DNA of 64,000 nucleotides, from IMG/VR virus record IMGVR_UViG_3300035661_000001, positions 124,001 to 188,000 of that record. The stretch is one strand, 5' to 3'. The position numbers were made by a program, and so were the translations under genes. Shown piece after piece: positions 36,726 to 63,646 of this stretch. How positions within the stretch are numbered: the first letter of the stretch is position 1; every line of letters begins with the position of its first letter. The notes beneath the pieces are model-generated. The model saw only the letters and a program-made list of their open reading frames with translations. It was not told where the DNA came from and ran no database searches.

Positions 36726-37118
36726 ATGAGTAAGCAATGCCGCGTCTGTGATTTATCCAAAAGAGGTTTCCCTGAATATTACGGAAGCTGTGAAGAAATT
36801 ACGATAGATTTTAAATGCCTTATGTGTAAAGGTGTTAATAATGTTATACACCATGCTAATGACAGTGTTTTCACGGGTCAAATATTTGAATGTAATATTT
36901 GTCATAATTATATTCAATATTATGATGATGATGATATGCTTCTATATAAATATGAATTTTATTATGACGAATTATTAATTGTTAATGATTTTGAATCAAA
37001 ACAAACGCATATTTCTTTTGACCCTTTATACGAAGCAGTTATTACATTACCATTTATTGAATTTTCAGATAAAGATCGTTTCTTCAAGAAAATTAAATCC
37101 TTAATCATTTTTTCGTGA
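36726..37118 (+). CDS. Zn-ribbon hypothetical protein with shared C-terminal motif
   Basis: Three CxxC; LPFI..; ends KIKSLIIFS. Confidence 0.7.
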   Translation: MSKQCRVCDLSKRGFPEYYGSCEEITIDFKCLMCKGVNNVIHHANDSVFTGQIFECNICHNYIQYYDDDDMLLYKYEFYYDELLIVNDFESKQTHISFDPLYEAVITLPFIEFSDKDRFFKKIKSLIIFS

Positions 37119-37122
37119 GCCT

Positions 37123-38991
37123 ATGAAGCGTATTAAAGAGTTAGAAAAGAAAATCACCAGTGCTCGTAATGACTATTATAATGGTCAAACTGAAATTTCA
37201 GATCAAATCTACGATGCCTGGGTAGATGAATTAAAAACATTAGATGCTAATAATCCCGCCGTAACTGCTATTGGAGCGCCCGTTGCCCCTTCAGAATGGA
37301 AAAAAGCTCAGCATAAAATTCCTATGGGATCTTTGGATAAAGTCAATTTACCAGAAGAATTGACTAAATGGGTTGAAGACCACGCGGCAAATGAATTGCT
37401 ATGGGTAGTAGAAAAATTAGATGGAATAAGTATTGAATTAGTTTATGAAAATGGTAAGCTAGTATCAGCTATTACTCGTGGTGATGGTACTATTGGCGAA
37501 GATATTACTTCAAATGTTATTAACATGCGTGGAGTTAAAACTAAATTAAAAACCAAATTCACAGGTTCTATTCGTGGTGAGATTATTATGAATAAAAGTA
37601 TTCATACAGAACACTTTTCTGAGAAAGCTAACCCTCGTAATGCAGCATCAGGTACCTCTAAAAGATTAGATGGTGTTGGAAGCGAATATTTGAATGTGAT
37701 AGTTTATCAAGTATTAGGGGATGAAGAATTTCAAACCGAATCTGAGCAATTCGAATGGTTAACTAATCATGGTCTTTATGTGCCTAATTATGGATTGTTT
37801 AAATCTGCGGAAGATGTTAATGCATATTGGAGAGATTATCAAGATAAATTTCGTTCAGTATTAGATTACGATATTGATGGTTTAGTTATTAGAATAAATA
37901 ATTTGACTGTTCAAACTGCTTTGGGTGATAGAGATATGCGTCCCAAAGGAGCTATTGCTTTCAAATTTGATAATGAAGCTCGCGAATCTGTTATTCGAGC
38001 TATTGTTTGGCAAGTTGGTAATTCTGGCAGATTAACTCCAGTTGCTACGGTCGATCCTGTTATGTTGGTAGGTGCATCTGTCAGTAGAGCTAGTTTGTAT
38101 AACATAGCATATGTGCAACAATTAGGATTAGATGTTGGAGCCACAGTATTAGTCGCAAGAGCTAATGATGTAATTCCAAGAGTTGAAGCATTGATTACTG
38201 GTACAGGAACTGTATTGTCCGCCCCTACTCATTGTCCAGAGTGCAATGGATTAGTAGAAATTTCAGGAGAATTTTTAAATTGCACTAATAGTGCAGGATG
38301 TCCAGCACAAGTACTCGGTAGAATTGAAAATTGGGTCAACGAATTAAATTTGTTGGAATGGGGAGAAGCCCTTCTATCTAAATTAGTGAAATCCAATAAA
38401 GTTCTTAAAGTACCTGATCTTTATAAGTTATCTGTAAATGATCTTATGGAATTAGATCGTATGGGCGAAGTCTCTGCTCAAAAATGCCATGATATTTTGT
38501 GGAAATCGTCGGAAGTTCCATTAGAAGTATTTTTGGGAGGATTATCCATTCCATGGATTGGAAAATCCACTATAAGACTTTGTATGACTGCCGGATATGA
38601 TACTTTAGATAAGTTAGAAAAATGTTCTGTAACTGATTTTGAAAATATTCCAGGGTTAGGTCCAGTCAAAGCTAAATCTTTATTTGATGGAATCAAATCA
38701 AATTATGAATTAATGCTAGAGCTTTTAGACAATGGGGTTACTCTTAAACAAGTGGTAGTTGGTAAGCTTAGTAATACTTCTGTGTGTTTTACTGGAGCCA
38801 TGGTTAATAAAAGACCTTTATTAGAAAAAATGGCAATAGATGCTGGGGCTGCTATAAAGAGTTCTGTTGGTAAAGGATTAACATATCTTGTTATTGCCGA
38901 TCCAAATAGTAATACTTCTAAAGCAGTTTCTGCTAGAAAACTAGGAACTAAGTTACTATCGGAAGAAGATTTTTTGGAACTTATTAAATAA
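37123..38991 (+). CDS. ligA: NAD-dependent DNA ligase
   Basis: EKLDG, TRGDG..GED, RGE, NPRNAA.G, IDGLV, AFKF, Zn finger, HhH, BRCT. Confidence 0.97.
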   Translation: MKRIKELEKKITSARNDYYNGQTEISDQIYDAWVDELKTLDANNPAVTAIGAPVAPSEWKKAQHKIPMGSLDKVNLPEELTKWVEDHAANELLWVVEKLDGISIELVYENGKLVSAITRGDGTIGEDITSNVINMRGVKTKLKTKFTGSIRGEIIMNKSIHTEHFSEKANPRNAASGTSKRLDGVGSEYLNVIVYQVLGDEEFQTESEQFEWLTNHGLYVPNYGLFKSAEDVNAYWRDYQDKFRSVLDYDIDGLVIRINNLTVQTALGDRDMRPKGAIAFKFDNEARESVIRAIVWQVGNSGRLTPVATVDPVMLVGASVSRASLYNIAYVQQLGLDVGATVLVARANDVIPRVEALITGTGTVLSAPTHCPECNGLVEISGEFLNCTNSAGCPAQVLGRIENWVNELNLLEWGEALLSKLVKSNKVLKVPDLYKLSVNDLMELDRMGEVSAQKCHDILWKSSEVPLEVFLGGLSIPWIGKSTIRLCMTAGYDTLDKLEKCSVTDFENIPGLGPVKAKSLFDGIKSNYELMLELLDNGVTLKQVVVGKLSNTSVCFTGAMVNKRPLLEKMAIDAGAAIKSSVGKGLTYLVIADPNSNTSKAVSARKLGTKLLSEEDFLELIK

Positions 38992-41285: not shown

Positions 41286-41525
41286 TTGATAAAATTAAAG
41301 ATCATGCTTATAAAATGGGCGGCATGTCTGGAAATTCCATATATGAAGTTTGGCATTATGATGCTGAGTCACCGCAATGATGGTTCCGCATATACAATGT
41401 ATGAATTATCGTTACCAGGTGATGAAATAAGTTATCACCGAGAATGGTGGCACATGGGAAAGAAACTCAATTGTTCTTCACAAAAAGAATTTGAGAAACT
41501 ATTGAAGTTGAAAGTATTTTGGTAA
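41286..41525 (+). CDS. hypothetical protein with shared C-terminal motif
   Basis: ends KLLKLKVFW. Confidence 0.6.
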   Translation: MIKLKIMLIKWAACLEIPYMKFGIMMLSHRNDGSAYTMYELSLPGDEISYHREWWHMGKKLNCSSQKEFEKLLKLKVFW

Positions 41526-42520: not shown

Positions 42521-42835
42521 ATGAATACAGTGATATTGATAGCTTCGATCTACGGGCTTGTATTTTTGATTAAAGAAACTGATGGTCCATGGGGAACGAT
42601 CAGTTGGTTTAGAAACAAATTAATGAACAATAAGTTTGTAGGAGTATTTTTCTACAAATTACTATCTTGTTATTTTTGCTCTGGTTGTCATGCCGGTTGG
42701 ATGGTCTATTTGTTAAGCGCCTCATACCATGAATGGTCTGTAAACAATTTTGTTTTATGGATCTTGGCTGGTGGAGCTATTAGTTTTATATTGAATTTGA
42801 TTGTAGAAAAATTAAGCAATCAGTCGGAGATATGA
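42521..42835 (+). CDS. small membrane protein (DUF1360-like)
   Basis: Hydrophobic segments; DGP..FR..LLSCYFC.G. Confidence 0.6.
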   Translation: MNTVILIASIYGLVFLIKETDGPWGTISWFRNKLMNNKFVGVFFYKLLSCYFCSGCHAGWMVYLLSASYHEWSVNNFVLWILAGGAISFILNLIVEKLSNQSEI

Positions 42836-43224
42836 TGGACTCATATGCGCTTTTTGAAGATATCATTTTTAATGATCTAGATGATAATTGCCCTTACAAC
42901 AACTCTTCAAATTACGAAGATTCTACTATTAAATATAATGATAATAATGTCAGAATTGTGGCTTCATCATTAGATTTTTGTTATGACATAACAACTGAAA
43001 AATATAGTGTTGTATGGTATGTCTCACCAACAGACGAGATAATAGTTTACGGGCGCGAATCTAAAACACATTTGCTCCAGTGTGCAAAAATATTTGATAT
43101 GTCTTACTTAGCAGAAATAGAAGATAATTCAGTTAACCCAGGCAAACTAGAAATTTTATACAGTTGTTCTGAACTTGTTGATAAACAAATAGATAGGTTG
43201 TTGAATTTAAAAGCATTTTTATGA
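42832..43224 (+). CDS. hypothetical protein with shared C-terminal motif
   Basis: ends RLLNLKAFL. Confidence 0.7.
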   Translation: MMDSYALFEDIIFNDLDDNCPYNNSSNYEDSTIKYNDNNVRIVASSLDFCYDITTEKYSVVWYVSPTDEIIVYGRESKTHLLQCAKIFDMSYLAEIEDNSVNPGKLEILYSCSELVDKQIDRLLNLKAFL

Positions 43225-46252: not shown

Positions 46253-46837
46253 ATGAATAATTTACAAGAAGTTTGGGAGCATTGTTTATTTTGTCCTCTA
46301 TGTCAAGACGTTTGTCGAGAGATGCATATGGCTCCTTTTTTAAAAGGAGCATTAATAGATAATATTAACAAACAAAATAATACTCTTGAATTTGATTGTC
46401 AAATCACTATAGTAAAAAAATCTTCCAAAAACATAAAAATTCATTATGTTATTGATCTAATTAATAATTCTTTTGAATCAAAAACACTTGATCCTAGTGA
46501 TGAGATGACAATAATTAATATGTCTGTAGGTATACAAGGCATATGTAAAAAATGTGAAGGCACTCTTTCCATATCTTCATCATTTGATATGGAAATCAAA
46601 TCTAAAACTATTTCAAATTTTGAAATAGCTAAAGATAGTGTAACTTTATTTGATGAAAATAATTATTATTGCATTACAGTTTTGAACTATTCAAAACAAT
46701 TATTAGTATCAAAATCATCTGATAAAGATTCTGGGCACTTCATTTCTGGAGCTATTATTCTGCCTTTTATAAATTTGGATTTTGCTAATCCAAAAGCTGT
46801 AATTTCAAAAATTAAAACTTTACTACTTTTTTCATAA
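46253..46837 (+). CDS. Zn-ribbon hypothetical protein with shared C-terminal motif
   Basis: CPLC, CKKC; LPFI; ends KIKTLLLFS. Confidence 0.72.
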   Translation: MNNLQEVWEHCLFCPLCQDVCREMHMAPFLKGALIDNINKQNNTLEFDCQITIVKKSSKNIKIHYVIDLINNSFESKTLDPSDEMTIINMSVGIQGICKKCEGTLSISSSFDMEIKSKTISNFEIAKDSVTLFDENNYYCITVLNYSKQLLVSKSSDKDSGHFISGAIILPFINLDFANPKAVISKIKTLLLFS

Positions 46838-48572: not shown

Positions 48573-48884
48573 ATGAAATGTAAATTTTGTACTTCAGAAC
48601 TTGAAGTTAAGCGTTTTCAATATGTAGATTATATGATATGTAGTCATCATAAACCCTCAAAAGTAGTATATAGATATGTAGCACCATATGGTGATAAATG
48701 GACTATTACTCATGGTGATTATAGTTTGTACTATAATAAAGGTAGAACACTTTTTCGAAAAATAAATGAAAAATCCGAAAAATCACAAGAATTTTATACG
48801 ATCATTAAAAGATTTGATCATGAATTAAATATTAAACCCGAAGATTTTGGTAAAAAAATACCAACATTATTAACATTTTTATGA
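48573..48884 (+). CDS. Zn-ribbon protein with shared C-terminal motif
   Basis: MKCKFC..C..H; IKPEDF; ends KIPTLLTFL. Confidence 0.72.
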   Translation: MKCKFCTSELEVKRFQYVDYMICSHHKPSKVVYRYVAPYGDKWTITHGDYSLYYNKGRTLFRKINEKSEKSQEFYTIIKRFDHELNIKPEDFGKKIPTLLTFL

Positions 48885-49174
48885 ATTGTAATTTTTGTAA
48901 AAGAGGTACTGTTCCTCATATTGTAAAAGTCAGTGGAGTATATAAAACATTTTATCAATGTTTTCGACATCCTAAATTAAGGGTTTCGTGGAAAACACCA
49001 GGAGTATTTGGAATCTCTAATGGTTCTTATAGAATAAGAAATGTTCCTGGTGGAAAATTCTATTTAGATAGATTACTGCCTAGTTTAAAAGTGTTAATGA
49101 GATTAGAAAGTGATCCTAAAGTAACACCTGAGAATTTTGAAAAGAAATTGAAAGTTCTACTGGCATTTTCGTGA
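48881..49174 (+). CDS. Zn-ribbon protein with shared C-terminal motif
   Basis: MNCNFC..C..H; VTPENF; ends KLKVLLAFS. Confidence 0.72.
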   Translation: MNCNFCKRGTVPHIVKVSGVYKTFYQCFRHPKLRVSWKTPGVFGISNGSYRIRNVPGGKFYLDRLLPSLKVLMRLESDPKVTPENFEKKLKVLLAFS

Positions 49175-53481: not shown

Positions 53482-53949
53482 ATGAAGTATTCTAAAGAAA
53501 TATTAGAGAAAATAGCAAAGAAATCCGTTTCTTATCAACAAGTAATGAGAGAGTTAGGATTGAAAATTAGTGGTGGAAGTAGTTCTTACCTAAAATCCAG
53601 ATTCAAACTCTACAATATAGATACTTCGCATTTCACAGGACAGGCTCACAATCGTGGAAAAGTTTCTAATCTTAAAATAAATCATGAAGATATTTTAGTT
53701 TTAGATCGTTTTTGTGGTCGTAGAGATCATGGATGGAGAATTAAACAGGCGCTTATTGAATCTGGTGTTGAAGAAAAATGTGCGTTATGTTTTATCGGTC
53801 CTCAGTGGAATGATAAAAAATTGGTTTTACAAATAGATCATATTGATGGTAATGGGTTAGACAATCGCAAGGAAAATCTAAGATTCTTATGCCCTAATTG
53901 CCATTCTCAAACAGATAATTATTGTTTTAAAAATATTAAATTATGTTAA
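53482..53949 (+). CDS. HNH endonuclease
   Basis: LQIDHIDGNGLDNRKENLRFLCPNCHSQT. Confidence 0.9.
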   Translation: MKYSKEILEKIAKKSVSYQQVMRELGLKISGGSSSYLKSRFKLYNIDTSHFTGQAHNRGKVSNLKINHEDILVLDRFCGRRDHGWRIKQALIESGVEEKCALCFIGPQWNDKKLVLQIDHIDGNGLDNRKENLRFLCPNCHSQTDNYCFKNIKLC

Positions 53950-54416: not shown

Positions 54417-54755
54417 ATGTCAAAAGTTGTTCATTGTAAAAAAGAACCATACGACGTATACATAGGTAGACCTTCTCGTTTTGGAAATCCGTTCTCCCAT
54501 CTACCAGGAACTCTTGCGCAATGGAAAGTTGATACAAGAGAAGAAGCAATTGAATGTTTTAAAAATTATCTAATGAATACTCCTATGCTTCTCAAGGCGG
54601 TTAAAGAAGAACTGCGCGACAAAATATTGGGTTGTTGGTGCCGCCCTGAATTTCCTTGTCATGGGGATGTATTGTTGGAAATATCAAACAAGGATGATGA
54701 TAGTGTATTTAATCCCGTTATCAATGGAGTTGATCCTACAGCATTTATTAAATAA
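54417..54755 (+). CDS. DUF4326-family protein
   Basis: VVHC..YDVYIGRPS.FGNPF..REEAI..EL..K.LGCWC.P..CHGDVL. Confidence 0.85.
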   Translation: MSKVVHCKKEPYDVYIGRPSRFGNPFSHLPGTLAQWKVDTREEAIECFKNYLMNTPMLLKAVKEELRDKILGCWCRPEFPCHGDVLLEISNKDDDSVFNPVINGVDPTAFIK

Positions 54756-55548
54756 ATTGTGACCATTTCCTTGGTAAAATTAATTGGCGATATTTATCAA
54801 TTTCAAGAATTTTTGATAAATCAATAATTTGTTGTTTTTGATATAATCTCGCTCTTTTCCAAACTTTTTCAGAAGGATCTTCAAATTTGAATTGATGTTC
54901 AAATCCCAACGAGTGAATTTTGCCACAGAACCAATCTATTAATATTTTATTACCAACGATATTAAAATGACTATTTCTAGAAATTTTAATAGAACCATCT
55001 CCATCAATATACCCTAGAATAAATGGTTTGATAAATTCATCCTTCACATTGGGAATAACTGGATAATAAGTTTTATTATTAACTAAACCCCATTTTGAAA
55101 AATCTTGTTTGAAAATTTTATGATTAAAACATAATCTATTTATTTCTCTATTTTTTCTTTTTGAAATAAATAATTTATCGTATTTTGTCCAATCACAAAA
55201 TTTATTTAAAATACTAATGTCTTGTGCATGAAGGCAAACTTCTAATGTAGACCTATGACTTTGTACTGGACTAATCGACCCATCAGCCAAGCAGAAACCC
55301 ATAAAATACGCAAGCTCATCAGTTTCCTCAAAAAAGAAATTAGTATCAAATATTCTTTGTTTAACCTCTGATCTAGATCGTGTTTTAATATTGTTAGACA
55401 GTAGAAATTTACGCATCCATGCTTCTGATACTTGAAAATCTTTTCCTAAAGATTTTATAGTTTTTCCCGATTCATAAAGTTTTATAATTAACTCACCATT
55501 ATCCATCAATAAATTTGTTTTATTCATGAAACCTCCGTATTCCTGCAT
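54748..55548 (-). CDS. LAGLIDADG homing endonuclease with N-terminal HTH
   Basis: AYFMGFCLADGS and FILGYIDGDGS. Confidence 0.88.
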   Translation of the reverse strand: MQEYGGFMNKTNLLMDNGELIIKLYESGKTIKSLGKDFQVSEAWMRKFLLSNNIKTRSRSEVKQRIFDTNFFFEETDELAYFMGFCLADGSISPVQSHRSTLEVCLHAQDISILNKFCDWTKYDKLFISKRKNREINRLCFNHKIFKQDFSKWGLVNNKTYYPVIPNVKDEFIKPFILGYIDGDGSIKISRNSHFNIVGNKILIDWFCGKIHSLGFEHQFKFEDPSEKVWKRARLYQKQQIIDLSKILEIDKYRQLILPRKWSQFI

Positions 55549-55580: not shown

Positions 55581-55886
55581 ATGCATAATAGAATAGTCTC
55601 TATAGAAGAAATAAAAAAATATGATAAAATCATCGATGATGATCCTTTAATACCAACAGCAATGAAAACAATTCAGGTGATACGTGAGGTCTGCCGTGCA
55701 GGTCTTTGGTTATCTGAGCAACTAGTAAAATCAGGATGCCCTGATATTTTAATCCCGAGGATAAGTTGGACGGCAGGCAAGCTTTCATTTGGAAGAGATG
55801 TCTGGGATGTCCACCAGGAAATCTTACAAAAATATCAAGATAATGAATTGTTATTTGAAGAAGATCCTGACGAAATTAAAAACTAA
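55581..55886 (+). CDS. hypothetical protein
   Basis: 101 aa ORF with aggaga RBS. Confidence 0.7.
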   Translation: MHNRIVSIEEIKKYDKIIDDDPLIPTAMKTIQVIREVCRAGLWLSEQLVKSGCPDILIPRISWTAGKLSFGRDVWDVHQEILQKYQDNELLFEEDPDEIKN

Positions 55887-55941: not shown

Positions 55942-57078
55942 ATGGCGAATAACAACACTCAAATGGCAAGTTCAGATTTCAATCTTGAAAGACTCAACAC
56001 CAAAGACCTCGCGGAACATGTTGCTTCATCAATTGATATTGGTGGTAATATCGCAATTTTTGGTCGTAGAGGAACTGGTAAAACTGAAATTTCCAAACAA
56101 GAAATTAAGAAGTCTGAATTACAAGAAGTGTATATCAACTTATCCGTTTTGGAAAGAGTAGATATGGGAGGCTATCCAGACATCATGGGTCGAGCCTCAG
56201 AAGAAGAAAAACGTAGAAAGTTCGTTGACTTCTTGCTGCCCAAATTCTATGAGCCAATGCTTGTAGGTAAAAGAGGCGTAGTCGCTCTCTTAGATGAAGT
56301 TGATAAAGCTGATCCAAGTTTGTGGGCACCTCTTTTGGAGTTCACTCAGTTTAAATCTATCAATGGCAATCCCTTACCTAATCTGCAAGCAATTATCATG
56401 ACTGGAAATTTGATTAGCGAAGGTGGTGCAAGACCAAGCTTGCCCTTGTTGGATAGAGCTGAAAAGTATTTGGTAGAAGCAGATGCTACTTCTTGGTTGG
56501 AATGGGCTGGTAAATCAGGACATATTCATCCTTCTATTACCGCATATATTTTAGATCATCCTAAGGATCTTTTCGGAGCTGTAGATCCAGAAGATCGTTA
56601 TGCAGATCCTTCACCTCGTGGCTGGCACCGAGCATCCGATATTCTTAACAAAGGTGAAGCGAAGGGTTGGTCACCAGTCCTGTTGAATAAGAAAGTTTGC
56701 GGTTGTATTGGTAAAGATGCTGGTATTGCATACAGCAATTATTATGAACACTATCAGCAACTGCTACCTATGGTAGAAGACATTTATCATGGTAAGGATG
56801 TATCAAAACGCTATGAAGCAATGGAGCCTACCAAGAAATTGGTTGCCTGTATGATTACTTGTGCCCGGCTGGCAACTCAGCTAGATCAGTCAAAAGGTAA
56901 AGACATTCCAGAGTCTGTTGGAAATGTTGGTAAATTCTTACAGAAAGTTTCTTCGGAAAATGTATTGGTAACTGTTAGAAGCCAAGTTCGGATCGATCGT
57001 ATCATTGATTATAATTTGGATGAGCATCCTGATTGGGAGTCTATCATGGCTAAAATCAACAAACAAGTAGATGACTGA
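55942..57078 (+). CDS. MoxR-like AAA+ ATPase
   Basis: Walker A GRRGTGKT, Walker B LLDEVD, TGN, LLDR, PSPRGW. Confidence 0.9.
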   Translation: MANNNTQMASSDFNLERLNTKDLAEHVASSIDIGGNIAIFGRRGTGKTEISKQEIKKSELQEVYINLSVLERVDMGGYPDIMGRASEEEKRRKFVDFLLPKFYEPMLVGKRGVVALLDEVDKADPSLWAPLLEFTQFKSINGNPLPNLQAIIMTGNLISEGGARPSLPLLDRAEKYLVEADATSWLEWAGKSGHIHPSITAYILDHPKDLFGAVDPEDRYADPSPRGWHRASDILNKGEAKGWSPVLLNKKVCGCIGKDAGIAYSNYYEHYQQLLPMVEDIYHGKDVSKRYEAMEPTKKLVACMITCARLATQLDQSKGKDIPESVGNVGKFLQKVSSENVLVTVRSQVRIDRIIDYNLDEHPDWESIMAKINKQVDD

Positions 57079-57113
57079 TACGTCACTCTGATGTATGATC
57101 CTAATGGAGAAAT

Positions 57114-58763
57114 ATGAAATTTTCTAAGATAATTGGAAAAACTAATGATAAGATGGTAGCCCAGGCTGAAGAGAAACTATCTCAGGTTTTTTTGGAGCTG
57201 GGCACCGCTTATGATAACGGTCACATTGGTTCAGGTATGGGAGGAGATCCTTTAATCTTCGGATTAATGTATCCTGTAGAACATATCTGTACTATGAATA
57301 TTCCAACTGCTGCCACAGATGGCAAAAGATATTATTGGAATCCCAAATTCGTAATTAAACAATCTAGAATTGGTTTACGTATTATTTGTGGTCACGAAGC
57401 TTGGCACGCCCTGTATATGCATCCTCAGCGCAGAGGATCTCGTTTACCTAAATTGTGGAACATCGCTGTTGATTATATTGTTAATAGCACTGTTATGGAT
57501 GATTTTAAAGCTCGCAAAATGAATGCTGCCGAAATGTTTGTCAAACATCTTGGCAAATTCATGACACTGCCACAATATGCAGAATTACTTAAAGACCCTT
57601 TCGCTAATCATAAAGGATTTGACGATCTGGATCCAACTGCTGGCGCACACGAATCAAGTATTTCTCTTCCAGGTCCAAATGAAGATCGTGAATTAACTGC
57701 TGAAGAACAAAAAGAATTGGAAAAAAGAGAAAAACCAGTTCGTTTTTATTATGCAGATCCGGACCTAACAGAAGAGATGAGAAGCCCAGAGAAGATTTAT
57801 GATTTTCTTTATAGCTTACTTCCTAAATGTCCTAAGTGCGGTAGTGTAGGAGTATACAAACCTCCGTCAAAAAATAAGGGCGGCGCTGGTAAAAACAAAT
57901 CTGAAGACAAGGAAAAATCTCAGGGCAAAGGTAAAGAACAAGACAAACATAATCATGAACATGGTGATGGAGAATCTTGTGATTGCGGTGAGCCTCATGA
58001 TGGTCAGGGTCAAGATCAAGACGGCAAAGGTTGTTGTGACCAGTGTGGCGGTGGTGTTGATATCTTTGGTTTAGGTGGTACCGTTGATGATCATATGGAT
58101 ACTGAAGAAACCCAAGAGAAACTAGCTAAGAGAGTTTCTGATGCTATGGAAGCTGCTAGAAAAATGGCAGGATATGTTCCAGCAGCATTGGAAGATGAAC
58201 TTGGAAAGTTAACTGCCCCTAGAGTAACTTGGCGAGATATTGTTAGAACGAAATTGTTAAAAGTTCGTGCTGGTAATGGAAGAAATGATTGGACCAGATT
58301 TAGAAGTCGTCCAATGTTTAGTGGGGTAATGACTCCTAAAAGAAGAAATTATTTTGCTCATTTCGGATGCTTGTTAGATACGTCTGGTAGTATGTCAAGA
58401 GATGATATGGCTCTTGGTATTAGTCAGCTTCAAGGACTAGATGATCGTGGAGAATGTGTTTTAACTTGTGGTGATGCTGAGATTTACTGGGATACCAGCG
58501 CAAAAATCAAAAGATGCAATGCTGAAGAATTACGCAAGATTGTTCCAAAGGGTCGAGGCGGTACGATGTATGCTTCTTATTTCTCTGATTATAGAAAACA
58601 TATTGGTGAATGTGACTTCTTAATTGTTATTAGCGATTTGTACTTATTAGACCAAGATGTTGCAGAAATGAAAGATCCTGGCGTTGATGTATTTTGGCTA
58701 TGTACCAGCAACAATACTTCTTTCAAAGCGCCATTTGGGAGAGTACTTCATTTAGATAAATAA
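57114..58763 (+). CDS. DUF2201-type metallopeptidase + VWA domain protein
   Basis: TAATDG, HEAWH (HExxH), WNIA.D; C-terminal MIDAS DTSGSM, GRGGT, ISD. Confidence 0.88.
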   Translation: MKFSKIIGKTNDKMVAQAEEKLSQVFLELGTAYDNGHIGSGMGGDPLIFGLMYPVEHICTMNIPTAATDGKRYYWNPKFVIKQSRIGLRIICGHEAWHALYMHPQRRGSRLPKLWNIAVDYIVNSTVMDDFKARKMNAAEMFVKHLGKFMTLPQYAELLKDPFANHKGFDDLDPTAGAHESSISLPGPNEDRELTAEEQKELEKREKPVRFYYADPDLTEEMRSPEKIYDFLYSLLPKCPKCGSVGVYKPPSKNKGGAGKNKSEDKEKSQGKGKEQDKHNHEHGDGESCDCGEPHDGQGQDQDGKGCCDQCGGGVDIFGLGGTVDDHMDTEETQEKLAKRVSDAMEAARKMAGYVPAALEDELGKLTAPRVTWRDIVRTKLLKVRAGNGRNDWTRFRSRPMFSGVMTPKRRNYFAHFGCLLDTSGSMSRDDMALGISQLQGLDDRGECVLTCGDAEIYWDTSAKIKRCNAEELRKIVPKGRGGTMYASYFSDYRKHIGECDFLIVISDLYLLDQDVAEMKDPGVDVFWLCTSNNTSFKAPFGRVLHLDK

Positions 58764-58765
58764 AA

Positions 58766-58808
58766 TAAAAGAAACGGACAGAAGAATTCTTCTGTCCATT
58801 TCTTTTTG
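58766..58808 (+). terminator. intrinsic terminator
   Basis: ggacagaag-aatt-cttctgtcc hairpin followed by atttcttttt. Confidence 0.7.
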
Positions 58809-58819
58809 AAAGTTCCAAT

Positions 58820-59257
58820 ATGAAAAGTGATAAATATCAAATTTACAAAGAGCCTGTTTCCGATATAGAAGAATATTTATTACTTGTCGCATTATTTGTA
58901 ACAGATCCTAAAATGAATCCTAACCAGGATTTAGATTTTTTCGTAGAATTAATATTTGATAGTAAATGGGGTCATATCCACACTAGGTTTTGTCGGTACT
59001 TTTTAGTAAAAAATGAAGATTATCTTTTTACATTTGAAGCTATTTCTAAATTTTTAGAATTTTTATCTGTAGATTCAATTTTATTTACTAATGATTTTTT
59101 CCATACCTTGTGTTCAGATTACCCTTCTGTTATGGTTGAAAAGGTATTTAATAATTTACCAAATTATTTGAAACATCAATCATTAGAAGTTCTTGTTAAA
59201 TACGACAAAATAGTAAATGAAATTCCAAGAATTAAAACTTACATGGTATTTTCATGA
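58820..59257 (+). CDS. hypothetical protein with shared C-terminal motif
   Basis: ends RIKTYMVFS. Confidence 0.7.
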   Translation: MKSDKYQIYKEPVSDIEEYLLLVALFVTDPKMNPNQDLDFFVELIFDSKWGHIHTRFCRYFLVKNEDYLFTFEAISKFLEFLSVDSILFTNDFFHTLCSDYPSVMVEKVFNNLPNYLKHQSLEVLVKYDKIVNEIPRIKTYMVFS

Positions 59258-59302
59258 TTAAAAATTATACAATAGAATTTAGGCGATATCAAATCAGCCA
59301 TT

Positions 59303-59590
59303 ATGAATATAAAAAGTTTAAAACCATATTTACATTATGTAGTTGACAATGAATTGGGTAAAAATAAAAAATTTGAATTCATTTCTTTAAAAGGTAAAAT
59401 TTACAATTTACTATTTTATAAGTTAAATGAGTTAGATCCACCATTTGAAGTTCTTTGCATCATAGATACGAAAAATAATTATAGGCATTTTTATGAGATT
59501 TCATGTGGAAAGATTATTTGGGATAATAAAATATCTAAACAATTAAAAAATTACTGTGATAGAGTTATGGGAATGTTCGTGTTTCTATAA
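59303..59590 (+). CDS. hypothetical protein with shared C-terminal motif
   Basis: ends RVMGMFVFL. Confidence 0.65.
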   Translation: MNIKSLKPYLHYVVDNELGKNKKFEFISLKGKIYNLLFYKLNELDPPFEVLCIIDTKNNYRHFYEISCGKIIWDNKISKQLKNYCDRVMGMFVFL

Positions 59591-60019
59591 TTAAGCTTTT
59601 TCTGTAATAGTAACTTGATACAATGATTGTCCTGTATTATTTTCTCCTTGATATTCTGTGCTAATAGAATGAATTAACATACCAAATTTGGATTGAATTT
59701 GATTTTCTACTTGGCTAATTATATTTAAATTTCCTGTTTGTTGTAGATTTTTTGGTACTGGAGATGTACCATATGTAAAAGTAATAGTGGGTCCCCAGGG
59801 CTCATAGACGCGACCTTCAGGAACTTCTACTTGGTACGTACGGGGTATTAACATAACTCCCGGAACATTTCCAACACATTGTAGAATTTCTAATTGGCTA
59901 ATAACACGATATTCTGGTGCGGCAGCTTCTGGCTGACCTTTCCAGGGATCGACAATTTGATCTAAATTATATTTCGCTTCAATTCTTTTGAAGAATTTAT
60001 TTCTTTGAAATTTATTCAT
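59591..60019 (-). CDS. hypothetical protein
   Basis: 142 aa ORF. Confidence 0.65.
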   Translation of the reverse strand: MNKFQRNKFFKRIEAKYNLDQIVDPWKGQPEAAAPEYRVISQLEILQCVGNVPGVMLIPRTYQVEVPEGRVYEPWGPTITFTYGTSPVPKNLQQTGNLNIISQVENQIQSKFGMLIHSISTEYQGENNTGQSLYQVTITEKA

Positions 60020-60037
60020 ATATAAATAAGTAGTTTT

Positions 60038-60376
60038 ATGCAGAGGAAAAAAATGATTACTTTAACAACTAAAGCAGTAACTAAAATAAAAGAAATAGCC
60101 GAATCAGACGCTATAGAAACTTTAACTTTGCGAGTTAAAGTTTTAGGTGGAGGTTGTGCTGGATTCTCTTATGACTTGTATTTTGAGGATAACATCACAG
60201 ATATGGATGAAGTTTTTGAAAAGGATGATGTCAAAATAGCAGTAGACATGCTCTCCCATCAGTATCTTGACGGCGTCGAGATTGATTATGTAGAGGGAGT
60301 TATGGGTGCCGGATTTAAGTTTTTGAACCCTAATGTTAAAAGTACGTGCGGTTGTGGATCATCTGTAGAATTTTAA
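60038..60376 (+). CDS. A-type Fe-S carrier (IscA/ErpA/HesB family)
   Basis: GGGCAGFSY, DY..G.M.AGF...NPN..STCGCGSS. Confidence 0.93.
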   Translation: MQRKKMITLTTKAVTKIKEIAESDAIETLTLRVKVLGGGCAGFSYDLYFEDNITDMDEVFEKDDVKIAVDMLSHQYLDGVEIDYVEGVMGAGFKFLNPNVKSTCGCGSSVEF

Positions 60377-61011
60377 ACATCTTTCCAGATTTTTCTTCGT
60401 ACTACTAATCTAATTAATGATGAAGAAACATTATTTTCTTCAGCCAAATATTTTATAGTATATTTTCCTGAAGCGTGCTTTTCTCGTATGTCTATTACTT
60501 TTTCTACTGTTAATTTTGATCTTTTGAGTACTTCTTGTTGTGAACATTTTCTTCCCGAAGTTTGAGATTTAATGTTATTAATAGTTTCTTGTGAATGATG
60601 TTTTCCATAAAAAGAATTTTTCGTTCCAAGTCTAGTACCTTTTCTATTTTTGCTCATTTGTGATTTAGTTTCTTCTGAGTGTTTAAATCCACTTGAACCA
60701 TCGCCACCGGCGGTTAAATTATACCCTGCTGGTCCAAATGATTGATAATGTTGAATCCAAAATACTTCTCTCTCTAATCCTAGAACTTCTGATTCCAATT
60801 CTTCAATTATCTCAAAAGTAAAATTATTTACACCATATTTATTTATAGCTTTATGAATAGCCTGATAAGCATGATTATAAGTTGTTTTGTATTTGGCAAC
60901 ATTGATATGTTTAGCCCATCTGTTGTGCGGAGTTTTGTTAGTTGTTTTTCCAATGTAAATTTTACCATTGGTTAAGTTTGTAATTTTGTAGATAAAAGTT
61001 TTTGATTCCAT
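60373..61011 (-). CDS. GIY-YIG homing endonuclease (NUMOD3, HTH)
   Basis: FIYKITN..IYIGKT..RW..H; GYNLT.GGDG; HSEET. Confidence 0.9.
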   Translation of the reverse strand: MESKTFIYKITNLTNGKIYIGKTTNKTPHNRWAKHINVAKYKTTYNHAYQAIHKAINKYGVNNFTFEIIEELESEVLGLEREVFWIQHYQSFGPAGYNLTAGGDGSSGFKHSEETKSQMSKNRKGTRLGTKNSFYGKHHSQETINNIKSQTSGRKCSQQEVLKRSKLTVEKVIDIREKHASGKYTIKYLAEENNVSSSLIRLVVRRKIWKDV

Positions 61012-61067
61012 GTGTATATGGAATATTATGCCGAAATGCGGAAGTTCTTTCTCAGTCTAAGGAAAAT

Positions 61068-61631
61068 ATGAATTACGATTTTGTAAATGTTATTGATGTG
61101 GAATCCACTTGTTGGGAACCACCAGAGTATCAACCACGTGATCAAATTTCAGAGATCATAGAAGTTGGAATAGCTGTTGTTGATTTGAAAAATCTAGTCA
61201 TCACAGAGAACGAAGGGATTTTGATTAAACCTCAAAATTCTAAATTGAGCAAGTTTTGCACAAAGCTTACAACTTTAACTCAGGAACAAGTAGATAAAGG
61301 TATTTTTATTCAAGAAGCTTATGAGCTTTTGAAAAATAAATATGGCTCTAAAAATAGGACTTTCATAAGTTGGGGCGATTATGATCGTTCTATGTTTGAA
61401 AGAAATTCCAGAGATTATGGAATTAAATATCCATTTGGTCCACGACATCACAATTTGAAAAACGCTTTCACACTATTGTATGGTTTGGACCGTGAATTGG
61501 GGGTCGATAAAGCCTTGGAATATCTAGGCATGGAATTAGAGGGCACACACCACAGGGGTGTGGATGATAGTAGAAACATTGCCAAGATTTTGATACATAA
61601 TCTAAAACGGTTTAGAAGTCATGGAAAATGA
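61068..61631 (+). CDS. DEDDh 3'-5' exonuclease (ERI-1/KapD-like)
   Basis: IDVESTCW, EIIEVG, LSKFC.KLT, SWGDYD, GTHHRG.DD..N. Confidence 0.9.
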   Translation: MNYDFVNVIDVESTCWEPPEYQPRDQISEIIEVGIAVVDLKNLVITENEGILIKPQNSKLSKFCTKLTTLTQEQVDKGIFIQEAYELLKNKYGSKNRTFISWGDYDRSMFERNSRDYGIKYPFGPRHHNLKNAFTLLYGLDRELGVDKALEYLGMELEGTHHRGVDDSRNIAKILIHNLKRFRSHGK

Positions 61632-61962
61632 ATACCAAGTATTTATTTCTGAATCCGCGGCTGGTCAAATAAAAGATCAGTTCAAAAAGCGCGGCACACC
61701 TGATGCTTATTTGAGGCTAGGAATTAAAGGTGGCGGATGTTCCGGATTCTCCTATGTGCTTCAGTACGAAGATTCAGCTCCTAGAGAAAAAGACCTATTA
61801 TTTACTGTTCACGATATAAAAGTAATAGTAGATAAAAAAAGTATTATTTATTTAACTGGAACAATTTTAGATTGGGAAAAAACATTTATCTATAGTGGTT
61901 TCAAATTTGTAAACCCACAAGAAAAAAATAAATGTGGATGTGGAAATAGTTTTAATATTTGA
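61621..61962 (+). CDS. A-type Fe-S carrier (IscA family), second copy
   Basis: GIKGGGCSGFSY, GF.F.NP...KCGCGNSF. Confidence 0.93.
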   Translation: MENEYQVFISESAAGQIKDQFKKRGTPDAYLRLGIKGGGCSGFSYVLQYEDSAPREKDLLFTVHDIKVIVDKKSIIYLTGTILDWEKTFIYSGFKFVNPQEKNKCGCGNSFNI

Positions 61963-62223
61963 GGTGAATATGTTTCATGGAGTTTATGTGAAGAGCCATC
62001 CCCGTGGCAAATGGTATTTGGCAACTTTAACTATTTCCGTCGAAACAGCATTGGCAGATAGACGAGCTATTATTCAACAAGCTGTATTAGAAGATAATAT
62101 AAAGGTTGAAGTTAAGATTCAATCTTTTACATCTGGATTTTATATTCCAGAAATGTTATCTGAAGTTAAAGAGTCAACATTACAATATAATTGACACATT
62201 GAATTTATGTTATATGACTGTAT

Positions 62224-63330
62224 ATGACAAATGCGTTGAATCTTCAAGAAATTGATCAAGAGCAAGCTCTTAATTTAAATAAGTTTTTTATTAAATCACA
62301 TCAAAATATTTTTTTATTTGGACGTCGAGGAGTTGGTAAAACTCATATTGCATTACAGGCAATAAAAGAATGTGGATTTAAAATAAATTATATCAATCTA
62401 AGCGTACTAGAAAGACCAGATTTAGCTGGATATCCAGATATTCATTCCCCTGGGGATGTGGTAAATTTTAAATCCCCTGCTTATTTGCCTTCTTTAAAAG
62501 ACGCATCTCCTGATAGCGTTATTTTATTTGATGAAGTAGATAAAGCTCCACCAGAAATTACCGCTCCATTATTAGAGATTTTACAATTCAAGCAAATAAA
62601 TGGTAATAAAATTAATGCTCTTTGCTGCATATTAACTGGTAATTTATCTAATGAAGGAACTTATTCCAACGCTATTAATTCTGCCTTATTAGATAGAGGC
62701 GCTAAATACATATTATCCTTCAATTTTGAAAAATGGGTTGATTGGGCAAAATCAAATCAAGTCCATGATTTGATTTTAGGTTTTCTTCGAAGTAATCCAG
62801 AATTTGCTTGCGGCAAGATAGATGACGCCTGTTATGCATCTCCATCACCTAGAGGTTGGACTATGGCATCAGAAGCGCTGATCAAAGCTAAAGAATTAAA
62901 AATTATTGATATTGACACTGTAACTCATATTATTTCCGGTTTTGTGGGAAATGAAGCGGGATTAAGATTTAAATTATGGTATGAACATTATCGTAAATTT
63001 GAACCATTTGTACATACATTAATATATTCTGGCAATTTAACAATAGACTATAACGAATTAACACCTACCGAAAAAATTATATTTGTAATAACAGCTTGTT
63101 ATTATGCTAAACAAAAATTAATGGAGCCTACCAAAAAGAATAGGTTTTTACCATTAGATAATTTGTGTAAATTTTTGACTACTAATAAAGTAGACTATGA
63201 AGTCCAAGTAATGGGCTTGTATAATAGTTTTGATTTCGATTATGTTATTAAAAACAAATTATATGAATGTAAACCATTTTTCGAATTATTCACTAAGATC
63301 AGTGAAAGCGTAACTATTAAAGGAAAATAA
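62224..63330 (+). CDS. MoxR-like AAA+ ATPase, paralog of 55942..57078
   Basis: GRRGVGKT, YINLSVLER.D..GYPD, FDEVDKA, TGNL, LLDR, SPSPRGW. Confidence 0.9.
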   Translation: MTNALNLQEIDQEQALNLNKFFIKSHQNIFLFGRRGVGKTHIALQAIKECGFKINYINLSVLERPDLAGYPDIHSPGDVVNFKSPAYLPSLKDASPDSVILFDEVDKAPPEITAPLLEILQFKQINGNKINALCCILTGNLSNEGTYSNAINSALLDRGAKYILSFNFEKWVDWAKSNQVHDLILGFLRSNPEFACGKIDDACYASPSPRGWTMASEALIKAKELKIIDIDTVTHIISGFVGNEAGLRFKLWYEHYRKFEPFVHTLIYSGNLTIDYNELTPTEKIIFVITACYYAKQKLMEPTKKNRFLPLDNLCKFLTTNKVDYEVQVMGLYNSFDFDYVIKNKLYECKPFFELFTKISESVTIKGK

Positions 63331-63331
63331 T

Positions 63332-63646
63332 ATGAGTTTAAAAATTGTAGATGATTCTTCTTTTGATAAAGAAGTTTTGAAATCTGAGACTCCTGTTCTA
63401 GTTGATTTCTCAGCCGCGTGGTGCGGTCCTTGTAAAAGACAGCTCCCTGTATTAGAGGAAGCTCAAAACGAATATAATGAATCAGTTAAGTTCGTTAAAA
63501 TTGATGTAGATGATAGTCCTGAGACTGCTGCAAAATTCAAAGTAAGAAGTATCCCAACAATTATTTTATTCAAACAAGGGGTACCTTCTAAAAATCATAC
63601 AGGTTTAATGTCAAAATCTGTGTTACAAAAATTTATTAGTGAATGA
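63332..63646 (+). CDS. trxA: thioredoxin
   Basis: VDFSAAWCGPCK; SIPT. Confidence 0.95.
   Translation: MSLKIVDDSSFDKEVLKSETPVLVDFSAAWCGPCKRQLPVLEEAQNEYNESVKFVKIDVDDSPETAAKFKVRSIPTIILFKQGVPSKNHTGLMSKSVLQKFISE

What the first reader, a model, noticed from the sequence alone, without database searches (positions are those of the whole stretch)
55942..63646. Two MoxR AAA+ paralogs, VWA-metallopeptidase, two IscA carriers and thioredoxin in 8 kb
Established: MoxR ATPases work with VWA adaptors in protein remodelling and metal-centre maturation (RavA-ViaA is linked to Fe-S enzymes). Here both the ATPase and the A-type Fe-S carrier are duplicated and divergent. The VWA/HExxH protein has a Cys/His-rich insert (CPKC, HNHEH..CDC, CCDQC). 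Inference: a phage metal/Fe-S maturation or ATP-dependent proteolysis machine, possibly hetero-hexameric. Two tagged orphan genes (58820, 59303) lie inside the block, making it a candidate reader of the C-terminal tag.
Basis: partly seen in the sequence, partly recalled or inferred. Interest (0 to 1): 0.62.

Follow-up and report, generated by a model that had tools for sequence, protein, structure and literature searches.

The report
Phage MoxR-VWA chaperone pair plus neighbours
The genes are all there, but only the first ATPase, its small upstream gene and the VWA/zinc-peptidase protein form a unit that travels together across unrelated phages; the second ATPase, the two iron-sulfur carriers and thioredoxin look like neighbours rather than parts of one machine.

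Summary
The window lies in a complete 452-kb phage found in microbial-mat and sediment metagenomes. All the listed genes exist at the stated coordinates.

**Core module.** ATPase A (55942-57078) and the DUF2201_N/DUF2201 protein (57114-58763) form a MoxR-like AAA+/VWA pair.
- The VWA protein has an invariant HExxHxxxxH motif and a full MIDAS motif.
- The pair recurs in Schitoviridae, a cyanomyovirus, a jumbo Pseudomonas phage and several metagenomic phage lineages.
- A small two-cysteine protein (55581-55886) travels with it.
- A strong hairpin follows the VWA gene in this phage.

**Second ATPase.** ATPase B (62224-63330) is 36% identical to A, keeps all catalytic motifs, and is A's sister paralog. 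231 deposited phage records each carry one copy.

**Other genes.** IscA1 (ErpA-type), IscA2 and thioredoxin are genuine.
- Their order is kept only in close relatives (59-83% identity), with variable spacing.
- Both IscA genes are missing from the interval in some relatives.
- In two other huge phages the counterparts lie over 100 kb apart.

**C-terminal tag.** The tag is real genome-wide, but nothing links it to this block.

**Verdict.** This is a known kind of phage chaperone pair with a lineage-specific duplication and insert. The single-machine reading is not supported.

The parts
55581..55886 (+). Small conserved protein 'up101' (101 aa), upstream partner of ATPase A. It has invariant C38 and C53 and an invariant C-terminal Asn.
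   Evidence: It is present upstream of A in all 26 related loci that cover that position (L009 and L015 begin inside A). It also occurs in the distant contig L051 at 40% identity. Alignment. No Pfam or PHROG family matches.
55942..57078 (+). ATPase A, a MoxR-like AAA+ ATPase of the helix-2-insert clade, paired with the VWA gene.
57114..58763 (+). DUF2201_N zincin-like domain (HExxHxxxxH), a CxxC...CxxC element interrupted by a low-complexity insert, and a DUF2201 VWA domain with a full MIDAS motif.
   Evidence: Pfam hits. Invariant H94, E95, H98, H103, D120, D422-x-S424-G-S426, T484 and D508 hold even against N4-like and cyanophage homologs. The Atlas places it in mostly viral DUF2201 clusters.
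58767..58806 (.). Bidirectional terminator-like hairpin (18-bp stem, T runs on both strands) directly after the VWA stop codon.
   Evidence: Comparable hairpins follow the VWA gene in six of 14 relatives (L005, L006, L012, L016, L023, L029), judged by eye from the printed sequence.
58820..59257 (+). Orphan (145 aa) with the C-terminal tag (...RIKTYMVFS).
   Evidence: Homologs occur only in L005 and L006. No family matches.
59303..59590 (+). Orphan (95 aa) with a tag-like C-terminus (...RVMGMFVFL).
   Evidence: Only weak homologs, in L005 and L006.
59591..60019 (-). Opposite-strand orphan (142 aa).
   Evidence: A homolog occurs only in L005.
60038..60376 (+). A-type Fe-S carrier 1, ErpA-type.
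   Evidence: NF010147 ErpA equivalog scores 121.4 bits against a cut-off of 117. The GGGC...CGC ligands are kept in orthologs. The nearest cellular relatives are Myxococcota ErpA at 65-69% identity.
60373..61011 (-). GIY-YIG/NUMOD3 homing endonuclease on the opposite strand.
   Evidence: Pfam. Its position varies or it is absent in relatives.
61002..61631 (+). RNase T/KapD-like 3'-5' exonuclease. The true start is probably downstream of the TTG, since orthologs are about 187 aa.
   Evidence: Pfam RNase_T E 6e-16. NF005838 KapD scores 97.8 bits, below its cut-off. Ortholog lengths.
61621..61962 (+). A-type Fe-S carrier 2, IscA/SufA-like, 36% identical to carrier 1.
   Evidence: TIGR00049 scores 106 bits against 58.8. 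The IscA equivalog is not reached (98.7 against 150.6). Identity. Cysteines are kept in orthologs.
61970..62194 (+). Small conserved protein 'o86' (74 aa from the ATG), upstream partner of ATPase B, with an invariant C-terminal Asn.
   Evidence: It is not homologous to up101.
62224..63330 (+). ATPase B, sister paralog of A, with no adjacent VWA gene.
   Evidence: phrog_1297 E 1e-41. AAA_5 scores 26.3 bits against 22. Motifs are intact. The A and B clades are sister at SH-like support 95.
63332..63646 (+). Thioredoxin (WCGPC). It starts 1 nt after the ATPase B stop codon.
   Evidence: Pfam E 4e-31. TIGR01068 scores 116.9 bits against 96.8. It follows B in every related locus that reaches that far.

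Best explanation
The functional unit is a three-gene module: a small two-cysteine protein (55581-55886), MoxR-like AAA+ ATPase A, and a VWA protein carrying a zincin-like HExxH domain.

The proposed mechanism is inferred by analogy with solved MoxR/VWA systems such as NorQ/NorD and CbbQ/CbbO.
- The ATPase forms a hexamer.
- The hexamer grips the VWA protein.
- The MIDAS site captures an acidic residue of a target protein.
- ATP hydrolysis remodels the adaptor and target, exposing the target to, or switching on, the zinc-peptidase domain.

The target is unknown. The module's position among early and middle genes (replication, nucleotide metabolism, rII-like) in several phages suggests a host or phage protein handled during takeover or replication.

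In this megaphage clade the ATPase was duplicated. Paralog B keeps its catalytic motifs, sits 3.5-10 kb downstream and is translationally abutted to thioredoxin.

The two A-type carriers (one ErpA-type, one IscA-type) and thioredoxin are best read as separate auxiliary metabolic genes. They would boost Fe-S cluster delivery and thiol redox capacity during infection. They are not obligate subunits of the ATPase machine.

Shown here: gene identities, motifs, the paralogy, and the distribution of the linkage. Inferred: oligomeric state, binding, proteolytic activity, and the roles of B, the IscA genes and thioredoxin.
For: **The ATPase/DUF2201 pair is conserved across distant phages.**
- N4-like nACB1 has the two genes with one small gene between them.
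- Cyanophage S-TIM5 has them adjacent.
- Jumbo phage Deifobo has them about 3 kb apart.
- Contig L051 has up101, one intervening 117-aa gene, A and VWA at 39-41% identity, followed by rII-like genes.
- Contig L052 has the two genes divergently adjacent.

**Motifs are invariant.** HExxHxxxxH and MIDAS DxSGS...T...D are unchanged across all these lineages.

**ATPase A resembles MoxR proteins.** Its model matches NorQ and CbbQ first in Foldseek, and dynein AAA3, NorQ and CbbQ first in VIA.

**A terminator-like hairpin closes the A-VWA unit**.

**Copy numbers.** The genome has only one DUF2201/VWA gene but two ATPases.

**The IscA genes are dispensable in relatives** that keep A, VWA, B and thioredoxin.

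**Precedents.** Phage A-type carriers are already described as auxiliary metabolic genes (PMC5332604). A two-subunit MoxR-type chaperone was already annotated in a phage in 2007 (PMC2147016).
Against: - No direct evidence of binding. The complex prediction gave no verdict.
- The VWA model was poor (pLDDT 57), so the peptidase fold is supported by the Pfam profile and motif only.
- RNase T, IscA2, o86, B, thioredoxin and the next gene are co-directional and tightly packed or overlapping. Co-transcription and a shared role are therefore not excluded.
- B always has thioredoxin directly downstream within this clade.
Confidence: 0.6

Rival explanations
1. The whole block is one metal-centre or Fe-S maturation system. 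A and B form a hetero-oligomeric MoxR motor. The VWA/zincin protein is the adaptor. ErpA-type and IscA-type carriers hand over clusters, and thioredoxin keeps the ligand cysteines reduced.
For: - The order up101-A-VWA...IscA1...RNaseT-IscA2-o86-B-Trx is kept in relatives at 59-83% identity.
- Both ATPases are catalytically intact, and there is only one VWA gene for the two of them.
- IscA2, o86, B and thioredoxin are tightly packed on one strand.
- The two carriers are of different types, as in cellular ErpA/IscA relays.
- The VWA protein has a lineage-specific CxxC...CxxC and His-rich insert.
- RavA-ViaA is linked to respiratory Fe-S complexes (PMC3893208, listed).
- The genome encodes a radical SAM protein as a possible client.
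Against: - Flanking genes outside the block are collinear in the same relatives, so order alone is uninformative.
- The IscA genes are missing from the interval in 2-4 of the related lineages.
- Components are more than 100 kb apart or absent in huge phages LR756504 and LR756511.
- The genome has no IscU/NifU scaffold.
- Most phages with the ATPase/DUF2201 pair have no IscA. Only 11 of 50,697 phage records match IscA, and most of those look bacterial.
- Minus-strand genes and a terminator-like hairpin interrupt the block.
Confidence: 0.12
2. An ATP-dependent protease that reads the C-terminal tag. The MoxR/VWA/zincin module recognises the hydrophobic ...K-x-L-L-x-F-x tail on about 15-30 small phage proteins and degrades or processes them, which would time their activity.
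For: - The tag is real, kept at the peptide level, and sits on otherwise unrelated small proteins.
- The module combines an AAA+ motor with an invariant HExxH motif.
- Two tagged genes lie directly downstream of the VWA gene.
Against: - The ATPase/DUF2201 pair occurs in many phage families. I did not test whether they carry the tag, and it is not needed to explain the pair there.
- Only 2 of about 30 tagged genes are in the block, against about 0.5 expected by chance for 13 genes, which is not significant.
- Those two genes exist only in the two closest relatives.
- Tagged genes cluster at five other places in the genome.
- MoxR ATPases are not known to thread substrates into a protease (general knowledge).
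Confidence: 0.05
3. ATPase B has taken on a function unrelated to the VWA protein, for example a stand-alone chaperone working with thioredoxin or the small o86 protein. The A/B pair is simply an old duplication followed by divergence.
For: - A and B are sister clades with a long stem on the A side.
- B has its own conserved small upstream gene (o86), unrelated to A's.
- B is followed by thioredoxin in all close relatives.
- LAGLIDADG inteins sit in the ATPase P-loop in a relative (ATPase B of L023) and in two database representatives (A- or B-type not determined). This suggests a protein under strong constraint.
Against: - There is no known partner or client.
- Deeper B-type genes lack thioredoxin next door.
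- This view is compatible with the best explanation rather than exclusive of it.
Confidence: 0.2

Closest known systems
NorQ/NorD and CbbQ/CbbO (MoxR AAA+ ATPase with a VWA partner)
   Same: - The top structural matches of the ATPase A model are NorQ and CbbQ.
- The partner gene encodes a VWA domain with a complete MIDAS motif.
- Both are two-gene units.
   Different: - The phage VWA protein carries an N-terminal zincin-like HExxH domain instead of the NorD/CbbO N-terminal regions.
- The ATPase has a much larger helical C-terminal region: 378 aa against about 255-267 aa.
- There is no Pfam AAA_3 or CbbQ_C hit and no NCBIfam hit.
- The client is unknown.
Phage ATPase (phrog_1297) plus DUF2201 protein (phrog_1314) pair, as in N4-like phages, cyanophage S-TIM5 and Bacillus phage 0305phi8-36's 'MoxR-type metalloprotein chaperonin'
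   Same: - The window proteins match the same two PHROG families.
- The adjacency is the same, and the HExxH and MIDAS residues are invariant.
- The 0305phi8-36 precedent is from the literature only (PMC2147016); its sequences were not compared here.
   Different: - This clade has a second ATPase paralog, whereas 231 deposited phage records have one copy each.
- It has an insert of about 120-175 residues with a CxxC...CxxC element in the DUF2201 protein.
- It has a conserved small upstream gene.
Mg-chelatase BchI/BchD and cobaltochelatase CobS/CobT
   Same: - Both use two AAA+-type modules plus one VWA/MIDAS domain for metal insertion.
- ATPase B has a weak hit to phrog_249 'porphyrin biosynthesis' (E 1e-6).
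   Different: - In BchD the second AAA module is fused to the VWA domain and is degenerate (general knowledge). Here both ATPases are separate and keep their motifs.
- No chelatase family hit passes threshold.
- No tetrapyrrole genes were seen nearby.
Viral A-type Fe-S carrier auxiliary metabolic genes (marine T4-like and other environmental viral genomes)
   Same: - They are stand-alone ATC genes in phage genomes, with radical SAM and redoxin genes elsewhere in the genome (PMC5332604).
- The three Cys ligands are kept.
   Different: - Here two carriers of different types (one ErpA-type, one IscA-type) lie 1.2 kb apart.
- There is no IscU.
MoxR-vWA ternary conflict systems (Kaur et al. 2020, PMC7159879)
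   Same: - A MoxR plus vWA core with a third small or variable component.
- vWA proteins are sometimes fused to peptidase effectors, rarely metallopeptidases.
   Different: - Those are cellular defence systems of multicellular bacteria with VMAP, iSTAND or FtsH third components and C-terminal effectors.
- Here the peptidase-like domain is N-terminal, the family is mostly viral, and no VMAP-like gene is present.

Membership tests
MoxR-class AAA+ ATPase (AAA_5 / helix-2-insert clade) | Intact Walker A, Walker B, sensor 1, arginine finger and sensor 2. | tested here: met
   GRRGxGKT, DEVDK, TGN, LLDR and SPSPRGW are conserved in both the A and B ortholog sets.
MoxR-class AAA+ ATPase (AAA_5 / helix-2-insert clade) | Helix-2 insert and pre-sensor-1 beta-hairpin. 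| tested here: inconclusive
   The ATPase A model has short strands at 78-79 and 97-98 flanking a low-confidence loop between beta2 and alpha2. It also has a hairpin at 138-143 before the sensor-1 strand. This comes from a predicted model only, and B was not modelled.
MoxR-class AAA+ ATPase (AAA_5 / helix-2-insert clade) | Profile membership (Pfam AAA_5 or AAA_3 above the gathering score, or an NCBIfam MoxR model). | tested here: inconclusive
   B scores 26.3 bits on AAA_5 against a cut-off of 22. A has no AAA_5 hit. Neither hits AAA_3 or any NCBIfam MoxR model. More distant family members do hit AAA_5.
MoxR-class AAA+ ATPase (AAA_5 / helix-2-insert clade) | Nearest solved structures are MoxR proteins. 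| tested here: met
MoxR-class AAA+ ATPase (AAA_5 / helix-2-insert clade) | Encoded next to a VWA-domain partner. | tested here: met
   This holds for A: the gap is 36 bp and the pairing is kept across phage families. It does not hold for B, which has no VWA neighbour, and the genome has only one VWA gene.
VWA domain with MIDAS | DxSxS...T...D metal-ion-dependent adhesion site. | tested here: met
   D422, S424, S426, T484 and D508 are invariant in 22 orthologs and in N4-like and cyanophage homologs. Pfam DUF2201 scores 34.7 bits against 26.4.
Zincin-type metallopeptidase | HExxH zinc-binding and catalytic motif plus a further ligand. | tested here: met
   H94, E95, H98, H103 and D120 are invariant across all lineages compared. 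Pfam DUF2201_N scores E 6e-21.
Zincin-type metallopeptidase | Zincin fold and peptidase activity. | not testable with these tools
   The model of the N-terminal half was poor (pLDDT 30-50 for residues 22-84). Foldseek found nothing significant. Activity needs an assay.
A-type Fe-S carrier (IscA/SufA/ErpA) | Three conserved cluster-ligand cysteines (C...CxC). | tested here: met
   GGGC(A/S)G...CGCG is found in both window genes and in nearly all orthologs.
A-type Fe-S carrier (IscA/SufA/ErpA) | Equivalog-level assignment. | tested here: met
   IscA1 scores 121.4 bits on the ErpA model NF010147 against a cut-off of 117. IscA2 reaches only the subfamily level: TIGR00049 scores 106 against 58.8, and the IscA equivalog 98.7 against 150.6.
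Thioredoxin | WCGPC active site and equivalog score. | tested here: met
   WCGPC is in the translation. TIGR01068 scores 116.9 bits against 96.8.
Single multi-gene system (ATPases + VWA + IscA x2 + Trx) | Components stay linked in independent lineages. | tested here: not met
   The linkage is seen only in close relatives with general collinearity. The IscA genes are lost from the interval in some of them. The components are unlinked in LR756504 and LR756511. Deeper B-type ATPases have no thioredoxin neighbour.
Single multi-gene system (ATPases + VWA + IscA x2 + Trx) | Physical interaction of the components. | tested here: inconclusive
   Only A plus the VWA domain was tried, and the result was no verdict (score 0.00). 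The other pairs were not tested.

The most novel reading that the evidence does not exclude
In this megaphage clade the duplicated ATPases A and B assemble into a mixed or two-tier MoxR motor, comparable to BchI/BchD. The motor would act through the single VWA/zincin adaptor and its lineage-specific Cys/His insert. Together with an ErpA-type and an IscA-type carrier and thioredoxin, it would insert Fe-S or other metal centres into phage or host clients. That would make it a virus-encoded metallocentre maturation machine.
Probability: 0.1. Interest if true: 0.65.

Novelty: new variant of a known kind. Interest (0 to 1): 0.35.

Why it matters
- **An uncharacterised, widespread phage module.** The ATPase/DUF2201 pair occurs in N4-like phages, cyanophages, jumbo phages and megaphages, and no paper in the library even mentions DUF2201. 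Strict conservation of both the HExxH and the MIDAS motif argues for a real enzymatic role. Culturable N4-like phages offer a tractable place to find it.
- **A possible clue to the mechanism.** The megaphage variant adds a second active ATPase and a Cys-rich insert. These could show how MoxR motors diversify.
- **Modest ecological interest.** Two Fe-S carriers of different types plus thioredoxin extend the list of viral auxiliary metabolic genes.
- **A caution for synteny arguments.** Conserved gene order among close relatives of a huge phage should not be read as evidence for a single machine.

Tried and rejected
- **Complex prediction** of ATPase A with the VWA domain (residues 320-549): no verdict, score 0.00. 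It counts neither for nor against binding.
- **Structure of the full VWA protein** from 22 close orthologs: poor (pLDDT 57). Foldseek found nothing below E 0.75; the weak rows were mostly VWA/MIDAS domains.
- **Sequence search of solved structures**: nothing for A or the VWA protein. B gave only generic Clp/Hsp104/midasin AAA hits.
- **DNA similarity to deposited phages**: none.
- **A second VWA partner for B**: the marginal DUF2201 hit at G000 100 kb is a TPM-domain protein next to LemA. The VWA_2 search found nothing meaningful.
- **Fe-S clients in the genome**: one radical SAM protein was found. Cys-rich candidates turned out to be an amidoligase/LysM protein, homing endonucleases and a UvrD helicase, or matched no family.
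- **Thioredoxin as ribonucleotide reductase partner by position**: rejected, because the reductase is 190 kb away.
- **Homology between the two small upstream genes** (up101 and o86): none.
- **The tag as a DNA motif rather than a peptide**: rejected, because codon usage at conserved residues varies.
- **RNA evidence**: no RNA run holds the region.
- **First tree run**: the maximum-likelihood search timed out. The FastTree result was used instead.

Full report
**Setting.** The window is bases 124001-188000 of a complete 451,956-bp phage record with direct terminal repeats. GC content is about 32%. The same sequence is held in microbial-mat and sediment metagenome runs, and no RNA run holds it. 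The part of the window upstream of the block encodes nicotinamide phosphoribosyltransferase, a UvrD-type helicase, an NAD-dependent DNA ligase, a DNA methyltransferase, phosphoesterases and several homing endonucleases. Downstream lie a polynucleotide kinase-phosphatase, another homing endonuclease and a methyltransferase. The block therefore sits in a mixed region of nucleic-acid metabolism and auxiliary genes.

- ATPase A, 55942-57078. It matches phrog_1297 at E 6e-41.
- The 549-aa DUF2201_N/DUF2201 protein, 57114-58763.
- IscA1, 60038-60376. It passes NCBI's ErpA equivalog cut-off.
- IscA2, 61621-61962. It is assigned at A-type carrier subfamily level only.
- ATPase B, 62224-63330. It matches phrog_1297 at E 1e-41 and scores above the AAA_5 cut-off.
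- Thioredoxin, 63332-63646, with WCGPC.

A and B are 36% identical and are the only two copies in the genome. The interval also holds two minus-strand genes (an orphan and a GIY-YIG homing endonuclease), an RNase T/KapD-like exonuclease, two conserved small genes, and a strong terminator-like hairpin right after the VWA gene.

**The ATPases.**
- An alignment of 20 A-type and 8 B-type orthologs shows Walker A (GRRGxGKT), Walker B (DEVDK), sensor 1 (TGN), the arginine finger (LLDR) and sensor 2 (SPSPRGW) conserved in both sets. Both paralogs therefore look active.
- The ATPase A model is good (pLDDT 81.6).
- Foldseek ranks NorQ hexamer chains first and CbbQ2 close behind.
- The 'MoxR-like' label is thus the best structural reading, but by a small margin. 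It gains most of its weight from the VWA neighbour.
- Neither protein hits a curated MoxR subfamily model.
- A profile search of 1.84 billion representatives finds 11,527 related clusters.
- In a FastTree of 86 sequences the A-type and B-type clades are sisters (SH-like support 95), set apart from two further clades of homologs. The A clade has a long stem.
- Among 231 deposited phage records with a homolog, each has a single copy.
- The duplication is therefore old but lineage-limited.

**The VWA protein.** I compared it with 21 orthologs, and separately with a 41%-identical homolog (L051), an N4-like phage protein and a cyanophage protein.
- The invariant positions are H94-E95-x-x-H98-x4-H103 and D120, together with the MIDAS residues D422, S424, S426, T484 and D508.
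- Within it, CPKC (239-242) is invariant and a second CxxC (308-311) nearly so. Both are also present in L051.
- The lysine/acid/glutamine-rich stretch between them, including HNHEH and CDC, varies greatly in length and is predicted disordered.
- I read this as a zinc-ribbon-like element interrupted by a disordered loop. That reading is an inference.
- The family is mostly viral in the ESM Atlas.
- The term DUF2201 does not occur in any paper of the library.

**What travels together.**
- *Close relatives.* In 27 related megaphage loci (60-100% identity for the VWA protein) the order up101-A-VWA...IscA1...RNaseT-IscA2-o86-B-Trx is kept.
- *Why order alone is uninformative.* The genes upstream of the block (HNH, DUF4326) are collinear as well. 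The distance from VWA to B ranges from about 3.5 to 10 kb. Homing endonucleases and orphans come and go.
- *The IscA genes are dispensable.* IscA1 is missing from the fully covered interval in L012, L016, L023 and L028. IscA2 is missing in L012 and L023. A, VWA, B and thioredoxin persist in all of them.
- *The tagged orphans.* They exist only in the two nearest relatives.
- *The ATPase/DUF2201 pair in distant phages.* It is linked in Schitoviridae phage nACB1, cyanophage S-TIM5, jumbo phage Deifobo, contig L052 and contig L051. In L051 the up101 homolog is also present and rII-like genes follow.
- *The wider block in independent huge phages.* In LR756504 the IscA, ATPase and DUF2201 homologs are at about 393, 535/564 and 209 kb. 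In LR756511 IscA and an ATPase are 130 kb apart and no DUF2201 was found.
- *Deeper B-type ATPases.* On short contigs at 42-49% identity they have no thioredoxin beside them.
- *Genome inventory.* The genome has one VWA gene, two IscA genes, no IscU and one radical SAM gene 100 kb away. Its ribonucleotide reductase is 190 kb from thioredoxin.

**Interpretation.**
- The conserved unit is up101 + ATPase A + the VWA/zincin protein, closed in this phage by a hairpin.
- By analogy with NorQ/NorD, I infer an ATP-driven remodelling module whose MIDAS site captures a target. In NorQ/NorD a finger of the VWA domain enters the hexamer pore and the partner's C-terminus contacts the ATPase (PMC13036017).
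- The invariant HExxH motif suggests that the adaptor also cuts something.
- A phage MoxR-type two-subunit chaperone was already proposed for Bacillus phage 0305phi8-36 (PMC2147016). An archaeal virus uses such a pair in tail development (cited in PMC7159879).
- ATPase B is an active paralog of unknown partner. It may share the VWA adaptor or work on its own with o86 and thioredoxin.
- The two carriers and thioredoxin fit the known class of viral Fe-S and redox auxiliary genes (PMC5332604).
- IscA1's closest cellular relatives are ErpA proteins of Myxococcota at 65-69% identity. This hints at the source of the gene or the host.

**The tag.**
- A C-terminal motif of the form hydrophobic-x-K/R-K/R-hydrophobic-K/N-x-L/M/Y-L/K-hydrophobic-F-x is found on 15 ORFs with a strict pattern (0.47 expected) and about 30 with a loose one.
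- The carriers are mostly unrelated small proteins.
- The conserved residues use varied codons, so selection acts on the peptide.
- Two carriers in a 13-gene block is not a significant excess, and they are the least conserved genes in it.
- I see no evidence that this block reads the tag. The tag deserves its own study.

**Limits.**
- The complex prediction returned no verdict.
- ATPase B was not modelled.
- The tree is a quick FastTree with local supports only.
- Promoter-like matches were no more frequent than in shuffled sequence.
- No alternative genetic code was used.
- No reads were laid.

Noticed in passing
Genome-wide; in the window e.g. 5839-6273, 36726-37118, 41286-41525, 42832-43224, 46253-46837, 48573-48884, 48881-49174, 58820-59257, 59303-59590: About 15 (strict pattern) to 30 (loose pattern) small, mostly unrelated proteins end in a shared motif such as ...KKIKTLLLFS or ...RxLNLKAFW. 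Only 0.47 matches are expected by chance. Codons vary at the conserved residues, so the motif is kept at the peptide level. The carriers lie in six clusters across the 452-kb genome. Its function is unknown.
   Followed up: partly
L023:18386-20539 (relative's ATPase B); also database proteins P0123 and P0133: An in-frame insertion of about 350 aa with a LAGLIDADG domain splits the Walker A motif (GVGK | ... HN | T). This looks like an intein in the ATPase P-loop. The N-terminal junction is atypical: QL precedes the first Cys.
   Followed up: partly
window 60038-60376: The nearest cellular relatives of the ErpA-type carrier (65-69% identity) are from Myxococcota (Polyangiaceae, Pendulispora, Sandaracinus). 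This may hint at the host or the gene's source, despite the phage's 32% GC.
   Followed up: no
window 55581-55886 and 61970-62194: Each ATPase is preceded by its own conserved small protein. The two are not homologous, but both end in an invariant C-terminal asparagine. The first also has two invariant cysteines.
   Followed up: partly
window 53482-53949, 54748-55548, 60373-61011; G000 189318-190241 and 370238-372016: The region holds many homing endonucleases: an HNH, a LAGLIDADG-like gene at 54748-55548 (sub-threshold Pfam hits only), a GIY-YIG, and further LAGLIDADG genes elsewhere in the genome. Their positions differ between relatives, which accounts for much of the variable spacing.
   Followed up: partly
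G000:C1:99140-101086 (outside the window): A LemA-family gene is followed by a TPM-domain gene. This pair is usually cellular and is here encoded by the phage.
   Followed up: no
window 30900-32279 and 37123-38991: A nicotinamide phosphoribosyltransferase and an NAD-dependent DNA ligase lie 5 kb apart. This may represent an NAD salvage and consumption pair.
   Followed up: no
PHROG phrog_1314: The PHROG family of the DUF2201 protein is labelled 'HNH endonuclease'. That label has spread into many phage records as 'HNH/homing endonuclease'. Pfam and the motifs instead indicate a zincin-like plus VWA protein, so the label is probably a mis-annotation.
   Followed up: partly
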